Positions 2,090 to 29,831 of a stretch of 41,678 bases of DNA are shown piece by piece (position 1 is the stretch's first letter; each line of letters starts with the position of its first letter). The stretch spans positions 26,590,189-26,631,866 of the forward strand of contig NC_068991.1 in NCBI RefSeq assembly GCF_001194135.2. Reading direction: 5' to 3'. A program made the translations under genes and the position numbers. The DNA is from Octopus bimaculoides. Its lineage: Eukaryota. The notes beneath the pieces were generated by a model. It saw only the letters and a list, made by a program, of their open reading frames with translations. It ran no database searches and was not told the origin of the DNA.

Positions 2090-5000
2090 GGTGTCAGCCG
2101 GAACACCAACGACCAAGTAGTCGAATGATGAAACAGATTTGATTTGAAAGGTCAGCTACTGGTTGAAATCTTCCCGAAACACAGGAGCTGGAAGTCCCCA
2201 CAACCGGAATATTCCAACAGATGACTATCCATGCTCGTCATCAAATAATAAAAAGAAAGATCATGAAAAATGTTCTAGGGGAGATGGTAAAGAAATTCTT
2301 ACAGCCTTCTATCAGGCCATATATTTCCTCACAAATAAATCTAATACTGTACAAACTATTTAAAATGTAGACAGAAACACCTTGAAGTAAGGACCATACA
2401 TAGACAGTAACAAACTTGCCAACGTCAGAAGAAACATTATGAAAAAAAAATTACTAACTGAAATGGAGATTGGCCAAATTAAACAATCAGCAAGGGATAA
2501 TAGGAACGAAGTTGCAGCTAAAGAAGATACTACAGAGGTAATAAATATAGACCAGCCTAGGGCTGATAAAAATGCAATGATGTTTGAAAGAGTTAACGTA
2601 ACTGATAAGCAAAATAAAATAATCTCTGAACCAACCATAGACACTAAGGCAGATGAAAATCAAATAGATGGAGATAGTCACGCAGAAATTGCCCCAACAG
2701 AACAACATGATCTATAAAATCAAAACATGATTAAATAGCTGAAAAATGAAAGGAACCCAAAATTTCGCATCTCTAACCAAAACCTGAAAATAATTGGTAA
2801 AGTCGACTTTGCACTTAAGGGTATAATTTCAGGTAATGATGTTAATATTACAGATTTCAACCTCCTGTATATGCGTCAGCGAAAATCTCAACGATTCTAC
2901 TTGGTGAAAAGATTGGAAAACAACAACATTTCCACAAAAAGCCTATCTGGCAAGAGCGTATTCAACACCAAATTCAGCTACTTAGGTCTGACATAGAATG
3001 TTTAAAAGACCTTAAGTTTGACAAGACTATCAAACCAACAAAAACCGAACAATAAAGAAAAAATATAATATGAAAACCATATTTCACATCGATACCATCA
3101 TAGAAACCATCAAGCAAAAGTTATCTGCTAACGCTGCCCCCATAACAAGGTATAAAAAGGGCGAAAAGAAAATCAAACTGGAGGAGTAGAATTGAAACTG
3201 AGATTGACTCATTGCGAAGGGAGATATCAGTATTAACTGCACTAATGTCTGGAAATGGTGTAAGATCAAGAAAAGGCAGGAAGATCGTGAGAAAAAATAG
3301 ACTCTCAACAAGAGAAGAACTAATGTCAGCCAATGAAACACTTAAACAAAAAGTTCAAGCAAAAGCTCAGAGAATACGCAGATTTGAGAAAAGAATCAAA
3401 TTCTACAAGCAAAATAAGATGTTCAAATAAAATTTTCAAATTCAATACCAAATTATTTCACAGGGAAATAGGGAAAGAAAAAATAACCATTGAAAATCCA
3501 CCCCTAATGGAAGAAGTGAAAACGTTTGGAAAGGGATCTGGAGTGATGAGAAACAATACAATGAAAATGCAGACTGGATCAAACGCACCCAAGATGCCTA
3601 CAAAAATCTACAAGAACAGGTATGGGAAGACATCTCAATCGCCGACCTAAGGACGTCACTAACGAAGGCTCATAAGTAGAAATCCCCTGGTACTGATAGA
3701 GTACAAAATTTCTGGCTCTCATCACTCTCTTCCGCAAACAAAATGTTAGTAATACTATTTAATAGTATTATGAAAGACCCAGAAAAAACTCCCCATTCGA
3801 TGGAAAATGGTATTACTTACCTCCTCCCGAAGAATAACGAAACAAAAGACCCCAAAAACTACCGGCCTATAACCTATTTGTCTATTACCTATAAGATTTT
3901 GACATCTATTCTAGTGGAGAAAACATATACGTTTATGGAAGAGAATAACCTCTTTCCCACTGACCAAAAAGGATACAGACGGGGCTCATACGGATGCAAA
4001 GATCAGCTCTTAATTAATCGCATGATCCTTGAGAACTGCCATAACAAGCGCAGAAATCTCAGCTCTTCATGCATTGATTATAAAAAAGCCTGTGGCAGCA
4101 TACCACATTCGTAAATTCTGAAATCGATGGACATTTTCAAAATTTCTCATGTGATTTCACATTTTTTAAAGTATAATATGTCACTATGGAACATGAGGTT
4201 CCAATTATGTCATTTTAATGGAGTATTGCGCTCAAACAATATTAGCATAAACTGTGGCATTTTCCAAGGTGACTCACTTTCACCACTAATTTTCTGCATA
4301 GCACTAATACCACTCTCAAGTGAACTGAATAGAATAGGGTATGACTACAAAATTGACAACAGGAAAATAAGCCATCTATTTTATATGGATGATTTAAAAC
4401 TATATGGCGGAGATGATGAAGAGCTTCAAGGACTACTACATACTGTGAAAGGATTCAGTGAGGATATCGGGATGGAGTTTGGCCTTGAAAAGTGTGCCAA
4501 AGCCACTTTTAAGAGAGGAAAACTGGTAAAGTCAAGTTCAATAGAATTAGATGTCGAAACAGTAATAAAAGAACTTGAGCAGGAACAAACCTATAAATAC
4601 CTAGGAATAAATGAAGGCTCTGGTATCCAGAATACAAGCATGAAAGAGAAGGTTAGGAAGGAATGTTATAGAAGAGTTTGTTCGAGCAGTTCTGAAGTCT
4701 GAGCTGAATGTATATAATAAGGTGTTAGCCATAAATTCCTTAGCACTCCCAGTTGTTCTTTATAGCTTCAATGTGCTTAACTAGAATACCAGTGAAATAG
4801 TCAAAATTGATAGAAAAAACCACAAGTTACTGACTTGTAATACGATGCACCATCCAAAGGCAGACGTGGATCGTTTTTACCTTCCCAAATCTCAGGGAGG
4901 TCAAGGCTTGATCCAGCTTGCACTTACATACAAAACCATTACAATCGGACTGGCCAAATACCTTGAAACAACCAATGATTGGATGCTGAAACTTGTTGAA

Positions 5001-6012
5001 AAACATGAAAGACCGAAAAAACTTTACTCTTTTCTGAAAGCTTGATCAGGTTGAAGGAAATGCGCCAACTGCTGCTGCAAATAAAATAAAATTAATTGCA
5101 AAGACAAAAGCAAATAAAAAATTATCTAGCAGATGGGAACAGAAACCTCTGCATGGCAAGTATGTGGCTCGTAGCAAACAAGCTGATGTCGACCAGAAAC
5201 ACACACATCAATGGTTACGAAGCTCAGGGCTAAAAGTAGAGAGTGAAGATTTCATATTAGCTGCTCAAGACCAAAGCTTATTAACCCGGAACAACCAAGC
5301 CAATGTGATAAAAATGGAGCTGACCAAAAATGCCGATTCTATAACGATGCGATTGAAACTATAGACCACCTAATCTCAGGGTGTAGAATATAAAGCAAGA
5401 CATGACAGAGTCGGCCAGTATTTACACTGGACAATATGTCGGCATTATAAAATGAAAACCGCTGACAAATGGTATAGACACCATCCTGAAGCTGTGACTG
5501 AGGGAGAAAATGTATCCATTCTCTGGGACTTCCCTGCACATACCGACAAAACTATAAAAGCTAATAAACCGGATATTATTATAAAAGATCAGACAAAAAA
5601 GATGTGTTTATTAATAGCGGCGAAAGAATTTGACAGGATCAGTAAATATAAAGACTTGCTAATAGAAATTGAAAAAATGTGGCACCTCAAGGCAACTACC
5701 GTACCAGTGATTGTATGATCTCTAGGAATGATAAAAAAGGTTACTGAAGCCTATTTGAAAATGATATCAGGCTTACCATCTCTACAGGAAGTGCAAAAAA
5801 TGGTGTTAACTGGAACGACTCATGTACTGAGAAGAGCATTATCGCTGTGAAAAGAACATCCATTCATGAATTTATTTATTTATTAATTTTTTTTAATACA
5901 TATTTTACCTGTGAATTTGCTTGTGTAAACTGGGAATGCATACTATGAGTTTCTCTGCCCTGGGTGTACGGAAAACACTCGGTGAAAAATGGAAGAAAAT
6001 TTGAAGAAAACA
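2090..6012 (+). mobile_element. Near full-length but inactivated R4/Dong-like non-LTR retrotransposon, copy C (5' boundary uncertain, may extend to ~1395)
   Basis: Colinear pieces of one large ORF: N-terminal domain (KKKLLTEMEIGQIK, ~2160-2500), RT (3743-4702), post-RT HHPKADVDRFYLPKSQGGQGLIQL (4845), degenerate CCHC knuckle KCRFYNDAIETIDHLISGC (~5328-5385), RLE NKPDIIIKD (~5563-5590) and C-terminal VLTGTTHVLRRALSL* (~5850). Many stops and frameshifts. Confidence 0.9.
3743..4702 (+). pseudogene. Reverse transcriptase domain of copy C (disrupted)
   Basis: Motifs PKNYRPIT, QKGYRRGSYGCKDQLLIN, DYKKA..SIPH, GIFQGDSLSP (Q at 4265-4267), HLFYMDDLKLY (YMDD 4382-4393), DIGMEFGLEKCA and YKYLGI. A premature TAA at 4112-4114 replaces the expected Trp. 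Confidence 0.93.
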
Positions 6013-6171: not shown

Positions 6172-7086
6172 GATAGAAATTGGCATTTCTGGAATGTATT
6201 TGTGGCTCAACTAAGAAAAGAAGAGAGATTGCTTCATGACAATGAGTGGGTCTGGTATTTTGATATGGAATGTCTAAGATTCTTGCATTTAGCCATTCAA
6301 CCTTTTAACAATCTTGCCGCAATATATCTCTATAAGACAACAAGTTACAACTGGAATTATTACAACGAATCGCTGGCGTCTGGCATTCTTTCAAGTGATA
6401 TCGTACAAAAGACAGAACATTTGATGGAACGATTTACGGTTACAACCTAATATTAACTGTCATTAAAATATTGGGTTATTTTTACGAAACCACGAATGTT
6501 TAGTTTATTTTATAATTGATTAACCTAACTCTGTAACCTACAATCATAAATATTGATTTTATATTTTTATCGTCTGTTGATTATAATATATGCGTGACTT
6601 ACCACAACTGCATTTCTTTAGAAACAACTGATATTCTTTTGGCAGTGTAATATATTGTTATGGAGGAAATGCGACGCTTTGCTTAATAGCTGAAGATGGT
6701 GGGATATATAAATGCATTCTCTTTCTCTTTGTGTAGATAAAAGTTGAGAGTTTTCCAAGAGGTGCAAAGAAAATACAACCGTACTTTTCTCTTTTGCGAT
6801 GCCGTGTACTAAAGGTTGCAATATATTTCTTTACAAATGAAATTGTAAGTAGAATTTATAAAATTGTATACTATTTTCTTTGATTTTCAACCAAATTACT
6901 TCAGGAGATATGACTAATATTTTTTGGAACGCTATTCATATTTAATTTGAAACTCTATCAAGTTTTTCTGAAACTTATCGAAAAGAATTTCTTTGATGTT
7001 ATTCAACACGGCAATAACGGAACTGGGAAAAAATATTTGAAATCGTCAATAGAAATAGCTGCTGTCATTCCAAGAATATTGCTTAA

Positions 7087-9491
7087 CCTTCCGTCTACCA
7101 GTAGATCCAATGAACCCATGTCAGTTTTTTCAGTTGCTTTTTCTTACTGTTTATATTATTTGATTCTGCTGATTTCTTGTGACTCTTATTTTATATTGAC
7201 TCTTTTATTTGTAAAATGGGAAATTTTCTGTATGTTTATAAAAGTTAGAAAATTCCACTTCATGCATTAATTACCGTATGGGTCCATTCCTCCCTCGCAT
7301 TAAATTAAGACACTAATCTCATCATTCGAAACAGAATAAAAGCATTATCAAATATGATTTTCTTAGATATTTATCAGATATAAAATAGATAAAATTGTCT
7401 TCAATTTATTTGCTGAATTTTAGATAAAATAGGAAAAATTATGAAAATAATCCTGTAAATTTGTGTGGTATTGCATTACCTTCAATCTGCTAGGTTATAG
7501 TGTGATGCAAACTTTCTGTGATGACGCATTTCTTACAATGTATTGCATCATCTTTCAGGAGAGTATAAATATGTGGGAGAGCAATGTCTGCCTTTAGTCT
7601 GTTATCAAGTTTCATGCAGTTCAGTTGTGCTTTCCAGTATGGTTAGACGTGGAAACCTAAGTGAAGACCAAATATCAAAAAGTTTATTGGAATTGTCTGA
7701 AGATGATGGTGTAAGTGATTTGTGCTGGACAGTTTAGGTTCTGTGTCATTAGGTGATGAAGATACTCAAAAACAATTATCTACAAGCCACCCAATTATGA
7801 ATGAGCAATATGTTTCTAGAGACAGACAAGAAGTTTGGCATTCTAATCTTCTTTCTCAAGCCGCAGTAAGGACTTCATCCTGCAATATTGTGCGCAAGAA
7901 TGTGGGCCATCCCGTTTTGCTAAAAGGTCTTGCAATAGCATTAAGACATATTTTACTATCTTTATGCGCCATGGACAAATGTTGAAGATCAGGTTGTTTA
8001 CAAAGATAAATGGAAGGAAATTCATCACTCTGAACTAAAGAAATTTATTGGACTGATTATTCTTATAGGTGTTTAAAAATCTAAACATGAAAATGTCACA
8101 CAGTTATGGAGTCAAGAAGCTGGCTGCCCAATATTCAACAAAATAATGAGTCGGAGAAGATTTCAACAGATTTTTCAAATATTGCGTTTTGATGATGCTT
8201 GTGCAAGACGGAAACAGAGAAGTGATGGTAAATTGGAGCCCATAAGAGAAGCATTTGAAATGTAAAATCACAATTTGCAAGGTGGATATGTTCCAAGTTG
8301 ATGCATGACAATTGATGAAAAATCAATTTCATTCAGAGGGCGCTGCTCATTCTGGGTGTGTATATTCCTTCAAAACCAGGGAAATATGGAATTAAAATTT
8401 GGGTAATATGTGACGGTGAAACATCTTACGCCTGAAAAATTCAAATCTACACTGGAAAAGTCCCAGTAAAAGGGAGAGAGACACATCAATGTTCAAGAGT
8501 TGTTGAAGACCTAGTAAATGAACTTGAAAATACTGGTCACAATATAACTTGTGATGAATTCTTTACAAGTCTAGGATTGGCTCGAAAGCTGCTTATCAAG
8601 AAAACTACTTTAGTTGGAACAATTACACAGAACAGAGTTGAACTTCCAAGTGCTTTCACAAATGGAAAAGAAAGAGAAATCAACAACACAATATTTGGAT
8701 CTCAAAAGGATTCTATGGTCCTATCTTATTGTCCCAAGAAAAATGTTGTTGTCACACGTATGAGCACAATGCTCTTAGCCTTCACTTGATACAAAAAGTG
8801 CTGAAAAGGAACCTGAAGATATTACATGTTACAACAAAACAAAAGGAGGAGCAGATATCTTAGATAAGATGGTAAGGACATACACTTGCAAAAGAATGAA
8901 TCGAAGATGACCTATGGTTATATTCTACAACATGATTGATATAAGTGCAGTGAATGCTAAACACCTTCACTTGCAAAGTTTCAAGGATAATAGAAGACAG
9001 TGCCTAATTCAGTTAGGAGAGGAACTTGCTGGAGCTACCTCTAAACAAGAACATGATAAACAATCTTCTAATTCTGCTAACATTTCTCAACCAAACAAGA
9101 AAAGCGGACGATCTTCAACCTCATTTGAGATTCTTCAACCAAAGAAAAATGGAAGATATTCTTTGTTTGACCTAAAAAAAAAACACAGGAAAACTTGTAC
9201 TAGATGTAAGAATTGTAATATCCATGTTTGCCAAGAACATTCCAATGTTGTCAGCATCCACTGTCGTGAAGAGCTGTACTTCTGTATCTTTGTTATTTTA
9301 AAAATTTATAATATATCCTGTAAGCTGTAGTTTTCTTCTTTAAAATTTGTTAGAAACAGTAATTCTTAATTCAGCTGCTAGCATATGAAATAGTGGTAGT
9401 TTGAATAAACTTTAATTAAGAGAAAAATATTGGGTCCATTGGACCCAGTTGGTAATTAGTGACATAGTTTTTTTCTCTGGTAGACCATGGG
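7087..9491 (+). mobile_element. Full-length (2405 bp) decayed piggyBac DNA transposon
   Basis: TTAA at 7083-7086 and 9492-9495. Left end CCTTCCGTCTACCAG versus reverse complement of the right end CCCATGGTCTACCAG (11/15 identical). Related subterminal motifs on both sides and an internal transposase relic. Confidence 0.88.
7639..9272 (+). pseudogene. piggyBac (PGBD4-like) DDD transposase pseudogene
   Basis: Pieces across frames: MVRRGNLSEDQI, IMSRRRFQQIFQILRFDD, MTIDE (D1), KPGKYGIKIWVICD, NITCDEFFTS (D2), LVGTITQNR, YNKTKGGADILDKM (D3), FYNMIDISAVNA and a Cys-rich C-terminus (CTRCKNCNIHVCQEH). Multiple stops. Confidence 0.9.
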
Positions 9492-10359
9492 TTAATATTT
9501 GTTGCAGTAATTTTATATATTACTCATCCAACCTCACACAAGTGGAAATACAGTGCATAGCAGATAAATCTTCAGGAAACATCACAAAGTTTATTTGCAC
9601 TTTTGTTATATAGTTTATTGTACTGCATTAACATTTATCAATAATAAAATACCAAATAGAAAACTGCAGGACCAGAAAACCTATTCAGGTCTTTCGGTCG
9701 TCTAGTAATATCAAAAATAAAACTCCCTTAAATCACAACCTGACACATGGAAAACGGAAAGATAAAAGGAAATGAGAATAACTTACTATATACTCATCAA
9801 AATACGACTGCCCAGTATCGTACCAATGTTTTACTTATTTCCAGCATTTCAGATATTCTCTCACGTTTTCGTAAAGAAAGGTATTTTGTTTTAACTGAAA
9901 TATAAACTTTCTCATAATGAGGTATGGTTCATAAACGCAGCTCTATATGTACGCAAACAGATGTTCATTGTTTCTAATAAAAACAATACATAGCAAGCAA
10001 AATATTCGAAAGTTCATCATTAATGTGGAAAAAGTATTGAAACACAATTTCATATATAAATAGAAAGTGAAAGATGATATAGATTTGCGCATTACAATAT
10101 GAACATATATATATATATANNNNNNNNNNNNNNNNNNNNNNNNNNNNNNNNNNNNNNNNNNNNNNNNNNNNNNNNNNNNNNNNNNNNNNNNNNNNNNNNN
10201 NNNNNNNNNNNNNNNNNNNNNNNNNNNNNNNNNNNNNNNNNNNNNNNNNNNNNNNNNNNNNNNNNNNNNNNNNNNNNNNNNNNNNNNNNNNNNNNNNNNN
10301 NNNNNNNNNNNNNNNNNNNNNNNNNNNNNNNNNNNNNNNNNNNNNNNNNNNNNNNNNNN

Positions 10360-16029: not shown

Positions 16030-16875
16030 GGGAGCGGCACGAAATATTCGTTCTGTTTTTGAAACTGATGGCTGTAAGTGTAGTTTGAGCGGTTTATTGG
16101 GAAAATTTTTCTCTCGCTACTTTTCAATCTGGACGCCCAACGTCTGTTAATATTGAAAATCTGAAAATTGCAATTGAGCAAGATCCAAAGCAAACTGCAC
16201 GGCAATTAGGAAAGTAGTTCAACTTAAATCACACTTTGGAAAATATTTAAACTGTTTCAGTGGCTCCCTCCCCATTATATGACTGCTTCTCAGCTCTATC
16301 AAAAGGATGTCTTTTGATCGTTATTGACGATTAGTCTTTGTACCAAACAATTCCAGGTTAGAATCAACACAGGTGATGAAAACTCTCTTCTCTATAATCA
16401 TAATCAGCTACAATGGTTAGTATCCACTGTAAAAGAATGCGTCCCCAACCCAAACTACATCCGAAAATAAGATATAATCTCTGTTTTACGGAATAAGAAA
16501 GGTATCTCCTGTCATAAATGTAAAGAGAAAACGAAGGATTTACTGCGAGGAGGTATCCTTGTAATTGAAAGAATTGAAGAAAGAAATGCAGTAGAAGAGC
16601 TACTCATCGATCACTTGTAAAGGGGTGTTTCTCTTACGCCATAATGCAAGACCACATATTGGTCAAGAAAAAAATTATGGATCACTTTACCTTACCATAT
16701 CTTACATTTTTAAAGATCATCGCAAAATTATTTAGAGCATGTTAATTGTGAAGGGGTTAAAAATCATATTGAGATTTTCTTTACTTCGGAACCTGAAGAA
16801 TTTTATGCCTGAGGGATCAACAATTTCACAAACAGATGGGACTATGTACTCAGTAATGAAGGAAAATATCATCAA
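16030..16875 (+). pseudogene. mariner-family transposase relic
   Basis: Broken frames: AARNIRSVF, SGRPTSVNIENLKIAIEQDPKQTARQLG, INTGDE (D1), KLHPK, HNARPH (D2 region) and the C-terminal FY..GI...[12 protein letters not shown]. No TIRs recognised. Confidence 0.7.
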
Positions 16876-19773: not shown

Positions 19774-20224
19774 TATGTATGTATGCGTGTGTGGGTGTGC
19801 GTGTTATCTATTTATGCATATATATGTGTGTGTGTGTGTGTGTGCGCGCGCGCGTTTGTATATATTATTACTCGTCTATTTTTTGCATATTTGCAATACT
19901 TAACATTGGTGTTATCTTCTCTTGCCGATAAATAAAAACTAAACATATCACACACTATTTTAGTACATTGTTTAAACATAGTATCCACGCCTTCCTTAAT
20001 TTGAAAGACACACACATTAAAAATCAATATATCATTACACTGTGTTTCTTCGAAAATATTTCTTAGTTATATTTCTATTGGAAATAAATATCCATTTGAA
20101 CAACCTAGAAATAATGAATACAATTAGGACACTGTTAACAAAACAATATCCTTCAGTTTTCATCATCGCATATGTTTTATTTCTGCTCAGTTTTGTTTGT
20201 TGGTTCTCTTCTGTGCACTTTTCC

Positions 20225-20577
<353 letters not shown>

Positions 20578-21149
20578 NNNNNNNNNNNNNNNNNNNNNNN
20601 NNNNNNNNNNNNNNNNNNNNNNNNNNNNNNNNNNNNNNNNNNNNNNNNNNNNNNNNNNNNNNNNNNNNNNNNNNNNNNNNNNNNNNNNNNNNNNNNNNNN
20701 NNNNNNNNNNNNNNNNNNNNNNNNNNNNNNNNNNNNNNNNATATTGATTTACTAATAGATATTTTCAACGTATTTAGAAAAAGAATATATCATATAAAAA
20801 GAAAGATCAGTAAGATAGAACATAAAAGACTTGTCTTAGATGCTGCGAAAGTACATAAGAAAATAGTTGAAAGAAATAAATTTGCAAGAAATAATTGAAC
20901 ATACGTGCATAAAATAATGATTCAACTTTGTGGTTTACGCAGTTAAACTTATTTCCATAGATAAACACTGACAGTTACGCCATGTTAAATGCTTACAAAT
21001 TCGATGACGGCTCCTCGGTGGATATTAACAAAAAAGCCACCCTTTTTAATTTGTTGTTTACAGTTTTACCATTTTGAAAATCAGCACCCATTTTTAACGG
21101 TTTTTTCTTATAAGAGTGACAGAGGTAGCTGAGTTTACCCCATAGATGT

Positions 21150-21210
21150 TATAAGCCGCTGATAAGGATTAAGATGGTCAACATCAAAATCCGAAATTGC
21201 GACCCGATTA
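21150..21210 (+). ncRNA. Type I hammerhead ribozyme (repeat unit 1; core mutated, probably inactive)
   Basis: Same fold. The core reads CUGAUAA (21158-64, G8>A), stem II is identical apart from the loop, GAAA is at 21192-95, and the triplet reads ACC rather than AUC (U16.1>C at 21202). Confidence 0.65.
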
Positions 21211-21476
21211 TGTACGCTGGAGACTTACCCAACTTCGTCAGTCAGTAAGACAGAGATTTTGTGGCTTTTGAGTTATTTTAACTCTTATCTTTAGCAAAAC
21301 GGTGTTTGTTAGTACACTCTGTCACTTTTCTGACCTCTATTAATTTTGCCTTTATGTTCTAATTGCTAATAAGCCATCTTTTCTAATTTGTTCTTTACAC
21401 TTTTACCGTTTTGAAAATAAGCACACGTTTTCAACGGTTTTTCTTATAAGATTAACAGAAGTAGTTGAGTTTAACC

Positions 21477-21536
21477 GTAGCCGCTGATGAGGATTAAGAT
21501 GGTCTACATCAAAATCCGAAATTGAGATCCAGCTAT
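21477..21536 (+). ncRNA. Type I hammerhead ribozyme (repeat unit 2; core intact)
   Basis: Stem I GUAGCCG (21477-83) / CAGCUAU (21530-36), 6 of 7 pairs. Core CUGAUGA 21484-90. Stem II GGAUU/AAUCC, 2x2 A loop, GAUG/CAUC, loop GUCUA. GAAA 21518-21. Minimal stem III AU-UGAG-AU. AUC triplet 21527-29, predicted cleavage after 21529. Confidence 0.78.
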
Positions 21537-21658
21537 ATACGCTGGGGTCTTACCACCCTTTGTCAGTTAGTAAGGCATATTTCGTGGCTTTTGAGATAAT
21601 TTTACTCTTATTTTTTAGCAAAAGCGGTTCTAATCAGTATCCTCTGTAAATGTTGTGG

Positions 21659-21734
<76 letters not shown>

Positions 21735-22404
21735 NNNNNNNNNNNNNNNNNNNNNNNNNNNNNNNNNNNNNNNNNNNNNNNNNNNNNNNNNNNNNNNNNN
21801 NNNNNNNNNNNNNNNNNNNNNNNNNNNNNNNNNNNNNNNNNNNNNNNNNNNNNNNNNNNNNNNNNNNNNNNNNNNNNNNNNNNNNNNNNNNNNNNNNNNN
21901 NNNNNNNNNNNNNNNNNNNNNNNNNNNNNNNNNNNNNNNNNNNNNNNNNNNNNNNNNNNNNNNNNNNNNNNNNNNNNNNNNNNNNNNNNNNNNNNNNNNN
22001 NNNNNNNNNNNNNNNNNNNNNNNNNNNNNNNNNNNNNNNNNNNNNNNNNNNNNNNNNNNNNNNNNNNNNNNNNNNNNNNNNNNNNNNNNNNNNNNNNNNN
22101 NNNNNNNNNNNNNNNNNNNNNNNNNNNNNNNNNNNNNNNNNNNNNNNNNNNNNNNNNNNNNNNNNNNNNNNNNNNNNNNNNNNNNNNNNNNNNNNNNNNN
22201 NNNNNNNNNNNNNNNNNNNNNNNNNNNNNNNNNNNNNNNNNNNNNNNNNNNNNNNNNNNNNNNNNNNNNNNNNNNNNNNNNNNNNNNNNNNNNNNNNNNN
22301 NNNNNNNNNNNNNNNNNNNNNNNNNNNNNNNNNNNNNNNNNNNNNNNNNNNNNNNNNNNNNNNNNNNNNNNNNNNNNNNNNNNNNNNNNNNNNNNNNNNN
22401 NNNN
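21735..22404. other. Assembly gap (largest of ten N-runs)
   Basis: N-runs at 10120-10359, 17850-18098, 20578-20740, 21735-22404, 23665-23674, 27191-27200, 29865-30390, 32150-32552, 35107-35238 and 38599-38691. Most abut (TA)n tracts. Confidence 0.99.
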
Positions 22405-24689: not shown

Positions 24690-24835
24690 CGAAATTTTGG
24701 GGGAGGGCGCCAGTCGTTTGGATCGACCTCAGTATGCAAATGTACGCAATTTATTGACCCCGAAAGGATGAAAGGCAAAGTCGACCTCGGCGGAATTTGA
24801 ACTCAGAACATAAAGGCAGACGAAATACACTGCAA
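24690..24835 (-). mobile_element. SINE family 2 fragment
   Basis: atttattgaccccgaaaggatgaaaggcaaagtcgacctcggcggaatttgaactcagaac...gacgaaatac; homologous to 11645-11760. Confidence 0.8.
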
Positions 24836-28251: not shown

Positions 28252-29290
28252 TTCGTCTTCCTTTCGAGTGTTAAACACAACTTTCGATAGGAACATACTC
28301 AAAATAGTCAGTATAAACCTACGTGGCTTGGGGTCGTCTTGGAAACAAGGCTACCTGTGAAACGACATCAAGTCACAAAATTTGCATATCATAGCCATCA
28401 GTGAGACCACACTCCACAGCCCGCAGGCACTCCAGTACATGTTCGGCGCACATTTCGACATTTATTTTTCTCCACGTCTGTCGAGAATAGGCGGAAGTTG
28501 CACCGCGGTGCTTCTTCGGAAGGGTCTGGAACTCAAAGTAATAGCAATTTTCGTAGACCAGGAGGGTAGGCTGGTCGTCATGGATGTCGATGGCAGCAAT
28601 GGGTGTACTTTTCGACTGATAACAGTTTATGCACCATCCTTAAGACAGGCCGGCCAGATTTCTTTCGACTTCTACAGGTTTTCGTGGGAACGTCTCGACC
28701 TTTACTTTTAGTGGGGGATTGGAAAGCAATCCTGGACATGCATCTACACTACATGGGCAGAGATAGTAATAGGAGTGGATGCAAATTCCCCCAAAGACTT
28801 GCTCAGACGTTTCCAACTGTCTGACAGGTACCGACTGGACCACCAGAATGTGCCAATGTGGACATGGAGCAACCGCATCTGGTCGTCCAGATCGTACTTA
28901 GAGTATTCTGTAGGACAGTGGATAAGGATAGTGTAGGTTGTCCACAATTCCATATAGTCAGCTACACAGACCACAAATTTGTGACTTGTTCACTTGACTT
29001 AGATAAGACACATAGTAGGGTCCCAGTTTACTGGAAGCTGAACGCGTCATTCACGGCACGCCAGGCTTACAGGGACCGGATTAGCACATTAGTTAAGAGA
29101 CCATTGACAGGTGCCATCATTAACAACAGATGGTGGTATGCTCTAAAGAAGGCAACTGAAGCAGAATCGGTTATATTGTGCCTTGTCCCGACCCAACCAT
29201 CACCAAACTGGAACGCATACTCTTCCGCTTCCGGTGAAAGGGATGTGTTCCGATGGTTAGGCGATCCATTTGCTGTCAACACCCGCTAAA
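27201..29290 (+). mobile_element. L1/Tx1-like LINE relic: ORF1, APE endonuclease and a short post-RT piece; RT absent
   Basis: ORF1 pieces IKIKNVPPETEIKWLVSAI and a degenerate gag-type knuckle RCNVCSSKAHLQTTFP (~27510-27560). APE from 28298: LKIVSINLRGLG, IIAISET, GRLVVMDV, LITVYAP, LLVGDWK, WTWSN, YLDRVF, YTDHKFV, YWKLNAS. Then CPDPTITKLERILFRF..KGCVPMVRRSICCQHPLK (~29183-29290). Confidence 0.78.
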
Positions 29291-29299
29291 GTAAAGAAG

Positions 29300-29345
29300 G
29301 AGAATTTCACGTTTCGTGCGGAGCTCTTCATCAGATATATGCAAG
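29300..29345 (-). ncRNA. Degenerate Penelope-type minimal hammerhead remnant
   Basis: The reverse complement reads atatatCUGAUGA a GAGC ucc GCAC GAAA CGU g. Stem II has one mismatch, there is an ACGU palindrome in place of stem III, the cleavage-site base is G (non-permissive), and stem I is weak. Confidence 0.45.
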
Positions 29346-29831
29346 AAACTAAAAGAGGTCACAATAGTGACGGAGGGTACTAACTAGCACCGTTTATGCT
29401 AAAATAAGAGTTAAATTAACTCTAAAACCACTAAAGCACTGTACTTAATGTCTGACGAAGGGATGTAGGTCTTTAGCCGTATCTTCTGGGAGTAAGAGCG
29501 AGATATCAAATTCTTATCTCTTATCTCCTTTTGATCATACCCCACTATAACTTTCCGCTTCCTTCACCACTCACCTTAATGAATCTCCTTTATTAACTAA
29601 AAACTATGGAAGATAAATCGTTCTGTGGCCAACGTTCGATAGTGAACACTGAAATGACACGATTGGATTCGTGGAATGTTTTTTTTTTTTTAATGTTTAA
29701 TACATGCACTTGAAGAAAACTTTTTTTTTCACTTGAACCAATAGCTCTAATCATAACAAAAAACACACCTGAAACAGGTGTAGTGAGTGAACCACTAACC
29801 ATACATACATATATATGTATATATACTTATT

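What the first reader, a model, noticed from the sequence alone, without database searches (positions are those of the whole stretch)
21030..21645. Hammerhead-ribozyme tandem repeat: candidate non-LTR retrozyme (small circRNA-forming retroelement) in a cephalopod-like genome
Seen: a non-coding ~326-337 bp unit present twice in tandem. Each unit has a type I hammerhead: stem I, CUGAUGA, a well-formed bipartite stem II (GGAUU/AAUCC + GAUG/CAUC, conserved in both copies), GAAA, a minimal stem III and an AUC site. Predicted cleavage sites after 21203 and 21529 are 326 nt apart. Established: non-LTR retrozymes in metazoans (cnidarians, bivalves, amphibians) are tandem arrays of roughly 150-400 bp units, each with a type I hammerhead. 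Their multimeric transcripts self-cleave to monomers that circularise. Inference: this is a retrozyme family of the host genome. I do not recall one being characterised in octopus but cannot verify that. The ORF track shows nothing here and the unit has no coding frame conserved between copies.
Basis: partly seen in the sequence, partly recalled or inferred. Interest (0 to 1): 0.88.

Follow-up and report, generated by a model that had tools for sequence, protein, structure and literature searches.

The report
Decayed hammerhead tandem repeat in octopus
A ~325-bp non-coding repeat sits twice in tandem in what is almost certainly octopus DNA; one copy carries a complete hammerhead-ribozyme motif and the other a mutated one, so it is most likely a worn-out copy of a known kind of small ribozyme-bearing mobile element (a "retrozyme"), not a new kind of system.

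Summary
The tandem repeat is real. Two units (21023-21345 and 21346-21664) have a period of 325-337 bp and are about 80-85% identical. They lie on a 995-bp island between assembly gaps.

Unit 2 carries every conserved hammerhead position (CUGAUGA / GAAAU / AUC, G10.1-C11.1) in type I topology. It is the only such locus in the window. Random sequence gives a match this good about 0.0017 times per window.

Unit 1 reads CUGAUAA (G8 to A), has C in place of U16.1, and has a broken stem I. This locus could therefore be cut at most once and cannot release the proposed monomer.

Covariance models do not support the motif. Rfam gives 14 bits against a threshold of 52. A model built from three validated retrozyme ribozymes gives E=0.57. 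Helix III is not palindromic, unlike all four validated examples. Covariation cannot be tested with two copies.

One further partial copy lies 8 kb away, so the sequence is dispersed. No Penelope-like element is in the window. Transposon homology places the window in Octopus.

Best reading: a fossil non-LTR retrozyme-like dimer, which would be a new member of a known kind (confidence about 0.6). The main rival is a chance motif in an ordinary duplicated repeat.

The parts
21023..21345 (+). Repeat unit 1 (decayed copy)
   Evidence: nhmmer and BLAST self-matches and the MAFFT alignment
21346..21664 (+). Repeat unit 2; its 3' end runs into a microsatellite
21159..21204 (+). Unit 1 hammerhead remnant: CUGAUAA (G8 to A at 21164), helix II intact, GAAA at 21193-21196, U16.1 to C at 21203, homologue of C17 at 21204
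   Evidence: read from the sequence and the alignment
21477..21536 (+). Unit 2 hammerhead motif with the full consensus core. Stem I is 21477-83 / 21530-36, CUGAUGA is 21484-90, helix II is 21491-21517, GAAA is 21518-21, helix III is 21521-28. The predicted cleavage is between C21529 and C21530.
21523..21552 (+). Competing hairpin (GAGAUCCAGC / GCUGGgGUCUU) that buries C17 in the minimum-free-energy fold
   Evidence: In some searches the hammerhead fold is -7.5 kcal/mol against an MFE of -16.4 to -24.3. Validated retrozyme ribozymes show similar deficits.
21660..21734 (.). (CT)15(TA)23 microsatellite at the right end of unit 2, followed by a 670-N gap (21735-22404). It appears to have grown out of the unit's own CCTCTAT.
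29349..29481 (-). Third, partial, dispersed copy. It matches unit columns 205-337, from about 9 nt after the cleavage site to the end of the unit (84% identity to unit 1 over 116 bp).
   Evidence: BLAST, alignment, nhmmer E=1.6e-22. Flank extensions are not significant.
29308..29334 (-). Hammerhead-core-like string CUGAUGA-A-GAGCUCCGCAC-GAA-ACGU-G, starting 14 nt downstream of the partial copy. It is defective, and it is uncertain whether it belongs to the element.

Best explanation
This is a decayed two-unit array of a short, non-coding, hammerhead-bearing tandem repeat in an Octopus genome. More units may be hidden in the 670-N gap. It is a fossil copy of a non-LTR retrozyme-like, non-autonomous retroelement.

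By analogy with the characterised coral, mussel and axolotl elements, the active ancestor would have worked as follows (all inferred). It was transcribed as a multimer. The type I hammerhead in each unit cut the transcript into monomers of about 325 nt with 5'-OH and 2',3'-cyclic phosphate ends. A host RtcB-type tRNA ligase circularised the monomers. A reverse transcriptase supplied in trans, probably from a Penelope-like element, copied the circle or multimer back into DNA as head-to-tail repeats.

What is shown here is the tandem repeat, the complete hammerhead consensus in unit 2, the inactivating changes in unit 1, the lack of coding signal, and one more dispersed partial copy.

At this locus the system is dead. 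A transcript could be cut at most once, after C21529, and no monomer can be released unless an intact unit lies in the gap.
For: - The tandem repeat has a 325-337 bp period and 80-85% identity.
- Unit 2 meets the CUGANGA / GAAAY / RUH core rule used by Cervera & de la Pena (Supplementary Figure S1 legend). It has G10.1-C11.1 and three helices in type I topology.
- It is the only descriptor hit in the window, with none in 97.5 kb of other invertebrate DNA, 76.5 kb of it Octopus.
- Equally good matches arise about 0.0017 times per random window, which is about 3e-5 for a 640-bp target.
- The best Rfam match for the 91-nt segment is a hammerhead family (HH9) in the same register as the manual reading.
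- The ribozyme segment is the best conserved stretch between the units: 46 of 50 positions, against about 80% overall.
- G+C is 35-36%. There is no codon-position bias and no protein homologue.
- A third partial copy lies 8 kb away on the other strand, so the sequence is dispersed.
- The unit size, low G+C and 2-bp helix III with a tetraloop match the published mussel and axolotl elements.
- Validated retrozyme ribozymes show the same large gap between the hammerhead fold and the local MFE, so that gap is not disqualifying.
- Cephalopod genomes carry Rfam Hammerhead_1 hits and Penelope elements.
Against: - Rfam finds nothing at gathering thresholds, and nothing at E<=10 in the 995-nt island. 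On 91 nt it gives only 14.1 bits against a threshold of 52.
- A covariance model built independently from three validated retrozyme ribozymes ranks the locus second in the window, at 10.9 bits and E=0.57.
- Helix II is unusually long and interrupted (27 nt).
- The 15.1-16.1 segment AUUGAGAU is not palindromic, whereas all four validated examples are perfect palindromes. That feature is held to be typical of metazoan hammerheads.
- Stem I has a mismatch next to the cleavage site.
- Unit 1 has lost essential core bases, and the differences between the units break pairs rather than compensate.
- The monomer is not more structured than shuffles (z -0.2 to -0.7, against -0.9 to -3.4 for validated elements).
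- No further copies were found in 81 kb of other Octopus DNA.
- There is no Penelope-like ORF in the window.
- The right boundary and any target-site duplication are lost in a microsatellite and a gap.
Confidence: 0.6

Rival explanations
1. The hammerhead is a chance motif. The unit is an ordinary interspersed repeat (a SINE-like or other non-autonomous element, or part of one) that was duplicated locally in tandem. Unit 2 happens to spell the 11-13 core bases with foldable flanks. No ribozyme ever acted.
For: - No covariance model is significant.
- The bare core pattern CUGANGA..GAAA is common in this window: 8 matches against 2.6 expected.
- Unit 1 has CUGAUAA, and the ancestral state cannot be polarised.
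- Helix III is non-palindromic, and stem I is weak and mismatched.
- There is no excess secondary structure.
- The partial copy at 29349-29481 lacks the ribozyme part.
- A genome of about 2-3 Gb would hold on the order of 100 equally good chance matches at 0.0017 per 39 kb, and the first stage may have read many windows.
Against: - The chance match would have to fall inside one of the rare tandem repeats of about 330 bp. That is the size and layout of known hammerhead repeats, and the expectation is about 3e-5 for this 640-bp target.
- Features outside my descriptor also fit natural hammerheads: G10.1-C11.1, U7, C17, Y15.2/R16.2.
- The ribozyme segment is the best conserved part of the unit.
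Confidence: 0.25
2. The repeat is a pair of pseudo-LTRs, or a terminal fragment, of a Penelope-like element whose coding part has been deleted or lies in the gaps. It is not an independent retrozyme family.
For: - PLE pseudo-LTRs carry hammerheads with a larger helix II and a minimal helix III.
- Vertebrate retrozymes are homologous to PLE termini.
- PLEs form partial tandems that assemble badly, and some prefer (TA)n targets. Here the array abuts (CT)n(TA)n and a gap.
- The partial copy at 29349-29481 is followed by a string like a PLE minimal hammerhead, with the extra base between A9 and 10.1 and an ACGU segment.
- Penelope elements are reported in cephalopods.
Against: - No ORF of 75 aa or more in the window matches GIY-YIG, and the only RVT_1 hits are the 3680-4699 pair, which I read as LINE-type. 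The other families found are piggyBac and Tc3-type.
- The units are adjacent with no intervening body.
- Unit 2 lacks the unpaired base 5' of helix II that is typical of PLE minimal hammerheads.
- The second motif has G at position 17, a mismatch in helix II and no helix I. Its position next to the copy has about a 2% chance expectation.
Confidence: 0.12
3. It is a host-domesticated hammerhead with a cellular role, such as an intronic or UTR ribozyme like amniote HH9/HH10, rather than a mobile-element relic.
For: The best Rfam match is HH9, but only weakly.
Against: - It sits in a transposon-rich stretch with no host exon detected.
- It is duplicated, with one copy inactivated.
- The score is far below the threshold.
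Confidence: 0.03

Closest known systems
Metazoan non-LTR retrozymes (Cervera & de la Pena 2020, PMC7229834), especially the Mytilus galloprovincialis 350-390 bp repeats
   Same: - Head-to-tail repeat of a few hundred bp (325-337 here), low G+C (35-36% here, 37% for the mussel clone), and non-coding.
- A type I hammerhead core with a 2-bp helix III closed by a tetraloop.
- A mollusc host.
- The sequence is species-specific, with no similarity outside the core, as the paper describes.
   Different: - There are only two units, and one has a dead core.
- Helix II is 27 nt and interrupted, against 13-14 nt.
- The helix III segment is not palindromic.
- Copy number, expression and circular RNA are unknown.
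- The monomer is no more structured than shuffled sequence.
Amphibian satellite 2 / axolotl Rtz_331 and Rtz_353 hammerhead repeats
   Same: The unit length is almost the same (330-350 bp). Helix III is minimal, which implies poor cleavage by a single motif.
   Different: The amphibian motifs rely on a palindromic loop 3 to form an active double hammerhead. AUUGAGAU would give only a weak duplex with two G.A mismatches. The amphibian repeats also have a higher G+C content and huge copy numbers.
Penelope-like element pseudo-LTR hammerheads (Cervera & de la Pena 2014, PMC4209133; Li et al. 2026 preprint 10.64898/2026.07.22.740005)
   Same: Helix II is larger than usual, helix III is minimal and helix I is weak. 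PLE termini are the proposed evolutionary source of retrozymes.
   Different: There is no PLE ORF nearby, no unpaired base between A9 and G10.1, and the units are directly adjacent.
Rfam hammerhead clan CL00010 (Hammerhead_1, HH9)
   Same: The core and the register are the same. HH9 is the top-scoring family for the 91-nt segment.
   Different: The score is 14.1 bits against a gathering score of 52, so it is not a member by Rfam's criterion.

Membership tests
Hammerhead ribozyme, type I | Conserved core CUGANGA / GAAA(Y) / (R)UH | tested here: met
   Unit 2 reads CUGAUGA, GAAAU and AUC. Unit 1 fails, with CUGAUAA and ACC.
Hammerhead ribozyme, type I | Three helices around the core, with helix I open and helices II and III closed, and a G10.1-C11.1 pair | tested here: met
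   Unit 2 has helix I of 6 pairs out of 7, helix II of 5+4 bp, and helix III of 2 bp with a tetraloop.
Hammerhead ribozyme, type I | Score at or above the curated threshold of an Rfam hammerhead model | tested here: not met
   There is no hit at gathering thresholds and none at E<=10 in 995 nt. HH9 gives 14.1 bits against 52 on 91 nt.
Hammerhead ribozyme, type I | Significant match to a model built only from experimentally validated retrozyme hammerheads | tested here: inconclusive
   Model R1 (coral, mussel, axolotl) gives 10.9 bits, E=0.57, rank 2 in the window. A three-sequence model is weak, and the 15-nt insertion in helix II is heavily penalised.
Hammerhead ribozyme, type I | Small palindromic helix III / loop 3 that allows the dimeric active form (typical of metazoan motifs, PMC4209133) | tested here: not met
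   AUUGAGAU is not self-complementary. All four validated examples are perfect palindromes.
Hammerhead ribozyme, type I | Compensatory changes in the helices across family members | not testable with these tools
   Only two copies hold the motif, and their differences in stems I and III break pairs. No Octopus genome is searchable by DNA here. Scans of metagenome, prokaryote and viral collections found nothing related.
Hammerhead ribozyme, type I | Loop 1 - loop 2 tertiary contacts | not tested
   Helix II has an internal A/A loop after 5 bp that could play this role. No criterion was available to score it.
Hammerhead ribozyme, type I | Self-cleavage | not testable with these tools
   This needs in vitro transcription.
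Non-LTR retrozyme | Head-to-tail tandem repeats of about 150-450 bp | tested here: met
   There are two units with a period of 325-337 bp. The array may continue into the gap.
Non-LTR retrozyme | A hammerhead in every unit, so that monomers can be excised | tested here: not met
   Unit 1 is mutated at G8 and U16.1. This is the state expected of an old copy, but this locus cannot yield a monomer.
Non-LTR retrozyme | Low G+C, with no LTR, PBS, PPT or coding capacity | tested here: met
   G+C is 35-36%. Differences are even across codon positions, and there is no protein homologue.
Non-LTR retrozyme | Many dispersed arrays in the genome | tested here: inconclusive
   There is one further partial copy in the window and none in 81 kb of other Octopus loci.
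Non-LTR retrozyme | Highly self-paired monomer RNA | tested here: inconclusive
   z is -0.2 to -0.7 here. Validated elements give -0.9 (mussel) to -3.4 (coral).
Non-LTR retrozyme | Expression as linear and circular RNA of monomer length | not testable with these tools
   No RNA data are available.
Penelope-like element (pseudo-LTR) | Adjacent ORF with a PLE reverse transcriptase and a GIY-YIG endonuclease | tested here: not met
   Pfam scan of 72 ORFs of 75 aa or more found RVT_1 (the 3680-4699 pair, read as LINE-type), piggyBac DDE and Tc3 HTH domains plus four weak, unrelated matches, and no GIY-YIG.

The most novel reading that the evidence does not exclude
Octopus genomes may hold a still-active retrozyme family whose hammerhead has an unusual architecture: a long, interrupted helix II and a non-palindromic loop 3. 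It would produce abundant circular RNAs of about 325 nt in cephalopod tissues. This locus would then be one decayed member of that family.
Probability: 0.2. Interest if true: 0.5.

Novelty: new member of a known kind. Interest (0 to 1): 0.3.

Why it matters
If the family is real, it would extend ribozyme-bearing circular-RNA retroelements to cephalopods. I found no paper in the searchable library that links retrozymes with octopus, squid or cuttlefish. A giant squid genome paper does list 235 Rfam Hammerhead_1 hits. The family would also add a hammerhead variant with an extended helix II.

The practical value is modest. It would give a repeat family to annotate, and a possible source of small circular RNAs in a lineage known for unusual RNA biology. 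This particular locus is a dead copy and has no function of its own.

Tried and rejected
1. Rfam at gathering thresholds on the whole window, and at E<=10 on the 995-nt island, gave no hammerhead. Only a 91-nt search gave a weak HH9 hit.
2. I translated the unit's longest shared frame and searched 5.8 billion proteins, hoping to recover spurious ORFs over other copies and so obtain their DNA. There were no hits.
3. An exact-pattern scan of JGI metagenome contigs for the core plus helix II base gave 28 matches, all unrelated to the unit. Scans of prokaryotic and viral collections for a 23-base conserved string gave nothing.
4. I fetched about 81 kb of Octopus bimaculoides and O. vulgaris DNA around piggyBac homologues, and about 42 kb of a non-octopus invertebrate, and searched it with an nhmmer profile of the unit. 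No copies were found.
5. I looked for a more degenerate unit upstream of 21023. There is none.
6. I tried extending the partial copy at 29349-29481 into the ribozyme region or across the unit junction. The extensions are not significant (p = 0.03-0.6), so I dropped the idea of fixed element termini.
7. I considered the long hairpin 21523-21552 as an alternative helix III. It does not give an A15.1-U16.1 pair next to GAA, so I rejected it.
8. ARAGORN found no tRNA-like SINE head in the window.
9. There is no similarity to the mussel or coral retrozyme sequences outside the core.
10. I rejected a coding interpretation of the shared 101-codon frame.

Full report
**What is there**

The finding lies on a 995-bp island of sequence (20741-21734) between two runs of N (20578-20740 and 21735-22404). 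Within the island, a non-coding unit occurs twice head to tail.
- Direct-repeat families have start-to-start spacings of 323-337 bp and 82-86% identity.
- A pairwise alignment gives 85% identity over aligned columns.
- BLAST gives about 79% over 307-310 bp.
- An nhmmer profile places the units at 21023-21344 and 21348-21664.
- TRF at default settings did not list the repeat.
- There is no more degenerate unit upstream.

On the right, unit 2 runs into (CT)15(TA)23, which seems to have grown out of the unit's own CCTCTAT. Then comes the 670-N gap. The array may therefore be longer in the real genome, and its right boundary is lost.

**The hammerhead**

In unit 2 the sequence reads as follows:
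- stem I 5' strand, 21477-21483
- CUGAUGA, 21484-21490
- helix II, 21491-21517 (GGAUU/AAUCC, a 2x2 A/A internal loop, GAUG/CAUC, loop GUCUA)
- GAAA, 21518-21521
- helix III, 21521-21528 (A-U, U-A, loop UGAG)
- C17, 21529
- stem I 3' strand, 21530-21536 (six pairs of seven, with a C x A mismatch at 1.2/2.2)

This satisfies the CUGANGA / GAAAY / RUH rule that Cervera and de la Pena used to accept motifs (Supplementary Figure S1 legend). It also has the G10.1-C11.1 pair that they describe as highly conserved.

Unit 1 is different. It has CUGAUAA (G8 to A, 21164), C instead of U16.1 (21203), and it loses two stem I pairs. The position homologous to C17 is 21204, so the spacing is 325 nt, not 326. 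The statement that each unit has a hammerhead is therefore wrong. One unit has the consensus and the other is a mutated copy.

**Is it more than chance?**

I wrote a simple descriptor: the core, helix II of at least 3 bp, an A...U-closed helix III, H17, and stem I of at least 3 pairs with at most one mismatch.
- It finds only this locus in the window on either strand.
- Markov-1 random windows of the same size give 0.15 loose matches and 0.0017 matches as good as the observed one.
- That is about 3e-5 for a 640-bp target.

The strict thresholds were set after seeing the hit. A 2-3 Gb genome would also contain on the order of a hundred such chance matches. What makes chance unattractive is that this match sits inside a tandem repeat of about 330 bp.

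Covariance models give no support.
- Rfam finds nothing at gathering thresholds, and nothing at E<=10 on the island.
- On a 91-nt slice the best family is Hammerhead_HH9, in the same register as the manual reading, but at 14.1 bits against a threshold of 52.
- A model I built only from the coral, mussel and axolotl ribozymes printed in Supplementary Table 2 of PMC7229834 ranks the locus second in the window, at 10.9 bits and E=0.57.
- Much of the loss comes from the 15-nt insertion in helix II.

**Controls against validated elements**

The nearest-neighbour energy of the hammerhead fold (-7.5 kcal/mol) is far above the local minimum (-16 to -24). That minimum uses a competing hairpin, 21523-21552, which buries C17. 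The four validated ribozymes show the same kind of deficit: -12.2 vs -22.5, -4.4 vs -15.5, -4.8 vs -25.5, and -3.9 vs -18.0. The deficit is therefore not evidence against the motif.

One real difference remains. In all four validated ribozymes the 15.1-16.1 segment is a perfect palindrome. This underlies the dimeric active form described for metazoan motifs. AUUGAGAU is not a palindrome.

The 325-nt monomer folds no better than shuffles (z -0.14 and -0.53; -0.2 and -0.7 in my own runs). Validated monomers give -0.9 (mussel), -1.4, -2.0 and -3.4. The locus is at the weak end, close to the mussel.

**Not coding**

Both units share a frame of about 101 codons that is broken only by stops in or next to the ribozyme core. 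The differences between the units fall evenly on the three codon positions (17/20/14). The translated alignment finds no homologue among 5.8 billion proteins.

**Other copies and context**

A third, partial copy lies at 29349-29481 on the minus strand.
- It matches profile columns 205-337, with E=1.6e-22.
- It runs from about 9 nt after the cleavage site to the end of the unit.
- Extensions into the ribozyme part or across the unit junction are not significant.
- It abuts what looks like an endonuclease fragment of a LINE on the plus strand; Pfam gave no hit for those ORFs.

Starting fourteen bases downstream of this copy is CUGAUGA-A-GAGCUCCGCAC-GAA-ACGU-G (29334 to 29308). It has the extra base between A9 and 10.1 and the palindromic ACGU of Penelope-type minimal hammerheads. 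It also has G at position 17, a mismatch in helix II and no helix I. The bare core pattern occurs 8 times in the window against 2.6 expected, and the chance that one lands there is about 2%. I record it but do not rely on it.

The window is otherwise made of microsatellites and transposon debris. Pfam finds RVT_1 (the 3680-4699 ORF pair, which I read as a LINE reverse transcriptase), a piggyBac transposase fragment and a Tc3-type HTH, and no GIY-YIG domain. No tRNA-like sequence is present.

**Organism**

The piggyBac-like ORF at 8436-8786 hits only Octopus vulgaris and O. bimaculoides proteins, at 72-77% identity. The window's transposons match loci from GCA_001194135.2 and GCA_951406725.2 at 78-94% nucleotide identity. 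The reverse transcriptase's best ENA relatives are a different organism, at about 65%. An Octopus origin is therefore supported. None of the 81 kb of other Octopus DNA holds a copy of the unit, so the family is not extremely abundant.

**Interpretation**

The anatomy matches the published description of metazoan non-LTR retrozymes: short tandem repeats of about 150-450 bp, low G+C, non-coding, a type I hammerhead, and sequences specific to each species. A 2026 preprint argues that these elements derive from the pseudo-LTRs of Penelope-like elements.

The most likely reading is a fossil two-unit copy of such an element. The mechanism of multimer transcription, self-cleavage, ligation by a tRNA ligase and reverse transcription in trans is inferred from those studies and is not shown here. 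This locus cannot release a monomer, because its upstream ribozyme is mutated.

The rivals are:
- a chance motif in an ordinary duplicated repeat, about 0.25
- a Penelope pseudo-LTR remnant, about 0.12, which overlaps with the main reading
- a domesticated host ribozyme, about 0.03

**Novelty**

Retrozymes are described from cnidarians to amphibians, including a mollusc. A giant squid genome paper already lists 235 Rfam Hammerhead_1 hits and Penelope elements. I found no paper in the searchable library that links retrozymes or hammerhead ribozymes with octopus species. At best this is a new member of a known kind, with an unusual helix II, and this particular copy is dead. The decisive test is a genome-wide copy census with covariation analysis, which the tools here could not run.

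Noticed in passing
window 29308-29334 (-): CUGAUGA-A-GAGCUCCGCAC-GAA-ACGU-G starts 14 nt downstream of the partial repeat copy. It resembles a Penelope-type minimal hammerhead, with an extra base after A9 and a palindromic ACGU. It also has G at position 17, an A x A mismatch in helix II and no helix I.
   Followed up: partly
window 20989-21291 and 21344-21646 (+): Both repeat units share one reading frame of about 101 codons that is interrupted only by stop codons in or beside the ribozyme core (TGA TGA within CUGAUGA). Substitutions show no codon-position bias and the translation has no homologues, so it is probably chance.
   Followed up: yes
window 21657-21734: The (CT)15(TA)23 microsatellite begins exactly where unit 2 should read CCTCTATTAAT. 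It appears to have expanded from the unit's own CTCT/TAT, and it is followed by a 670-N gap.
   Followed up: partly
window 7692-9499 (+): A piggyBac-type transposase fragment (DDE_Tnp_1_7) is 81-85% identical at the DNA level to loci in Octopus bimaculoides and O. vulgaris. Its only protein hits are from Octopus. This identifies the source lineage.
   Followed up: yes
window 3166-5040 (+) and 28300-29290 (+): There are LINE fragments. One has a reverse transcriptase domain (RVT_1, ORFs 3680-4111 and 4115-4699) and is 78% identical to an O. vulgaris locus. The other looks like an endonuclease (APE-like) fragment by eye, though Pfam gave no hit for its ORFs; it has frameshifts and stops and directly abuts the partial repeat copy.
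   Followed up: partly
window 24749-24828; L032 at 332-410, 6406-6466, 16685-16765, 19790-19868, 19972-20050: A repeat of about 80 bp in the window is present five or more times in one 20-kb O. vulgaris locus, at 89-97% identity. It is probably an abundant short interspersed element.
   Followed up: no
whole window: There are ten runs of N (10 to 670 bases) and about 50 microsatellite rows from TRF. The bare hammerhead core pattern CUGANGA(7-30)GAAA occurs 8 times against 2.6 expected from shuffles.
   Followed up: partly
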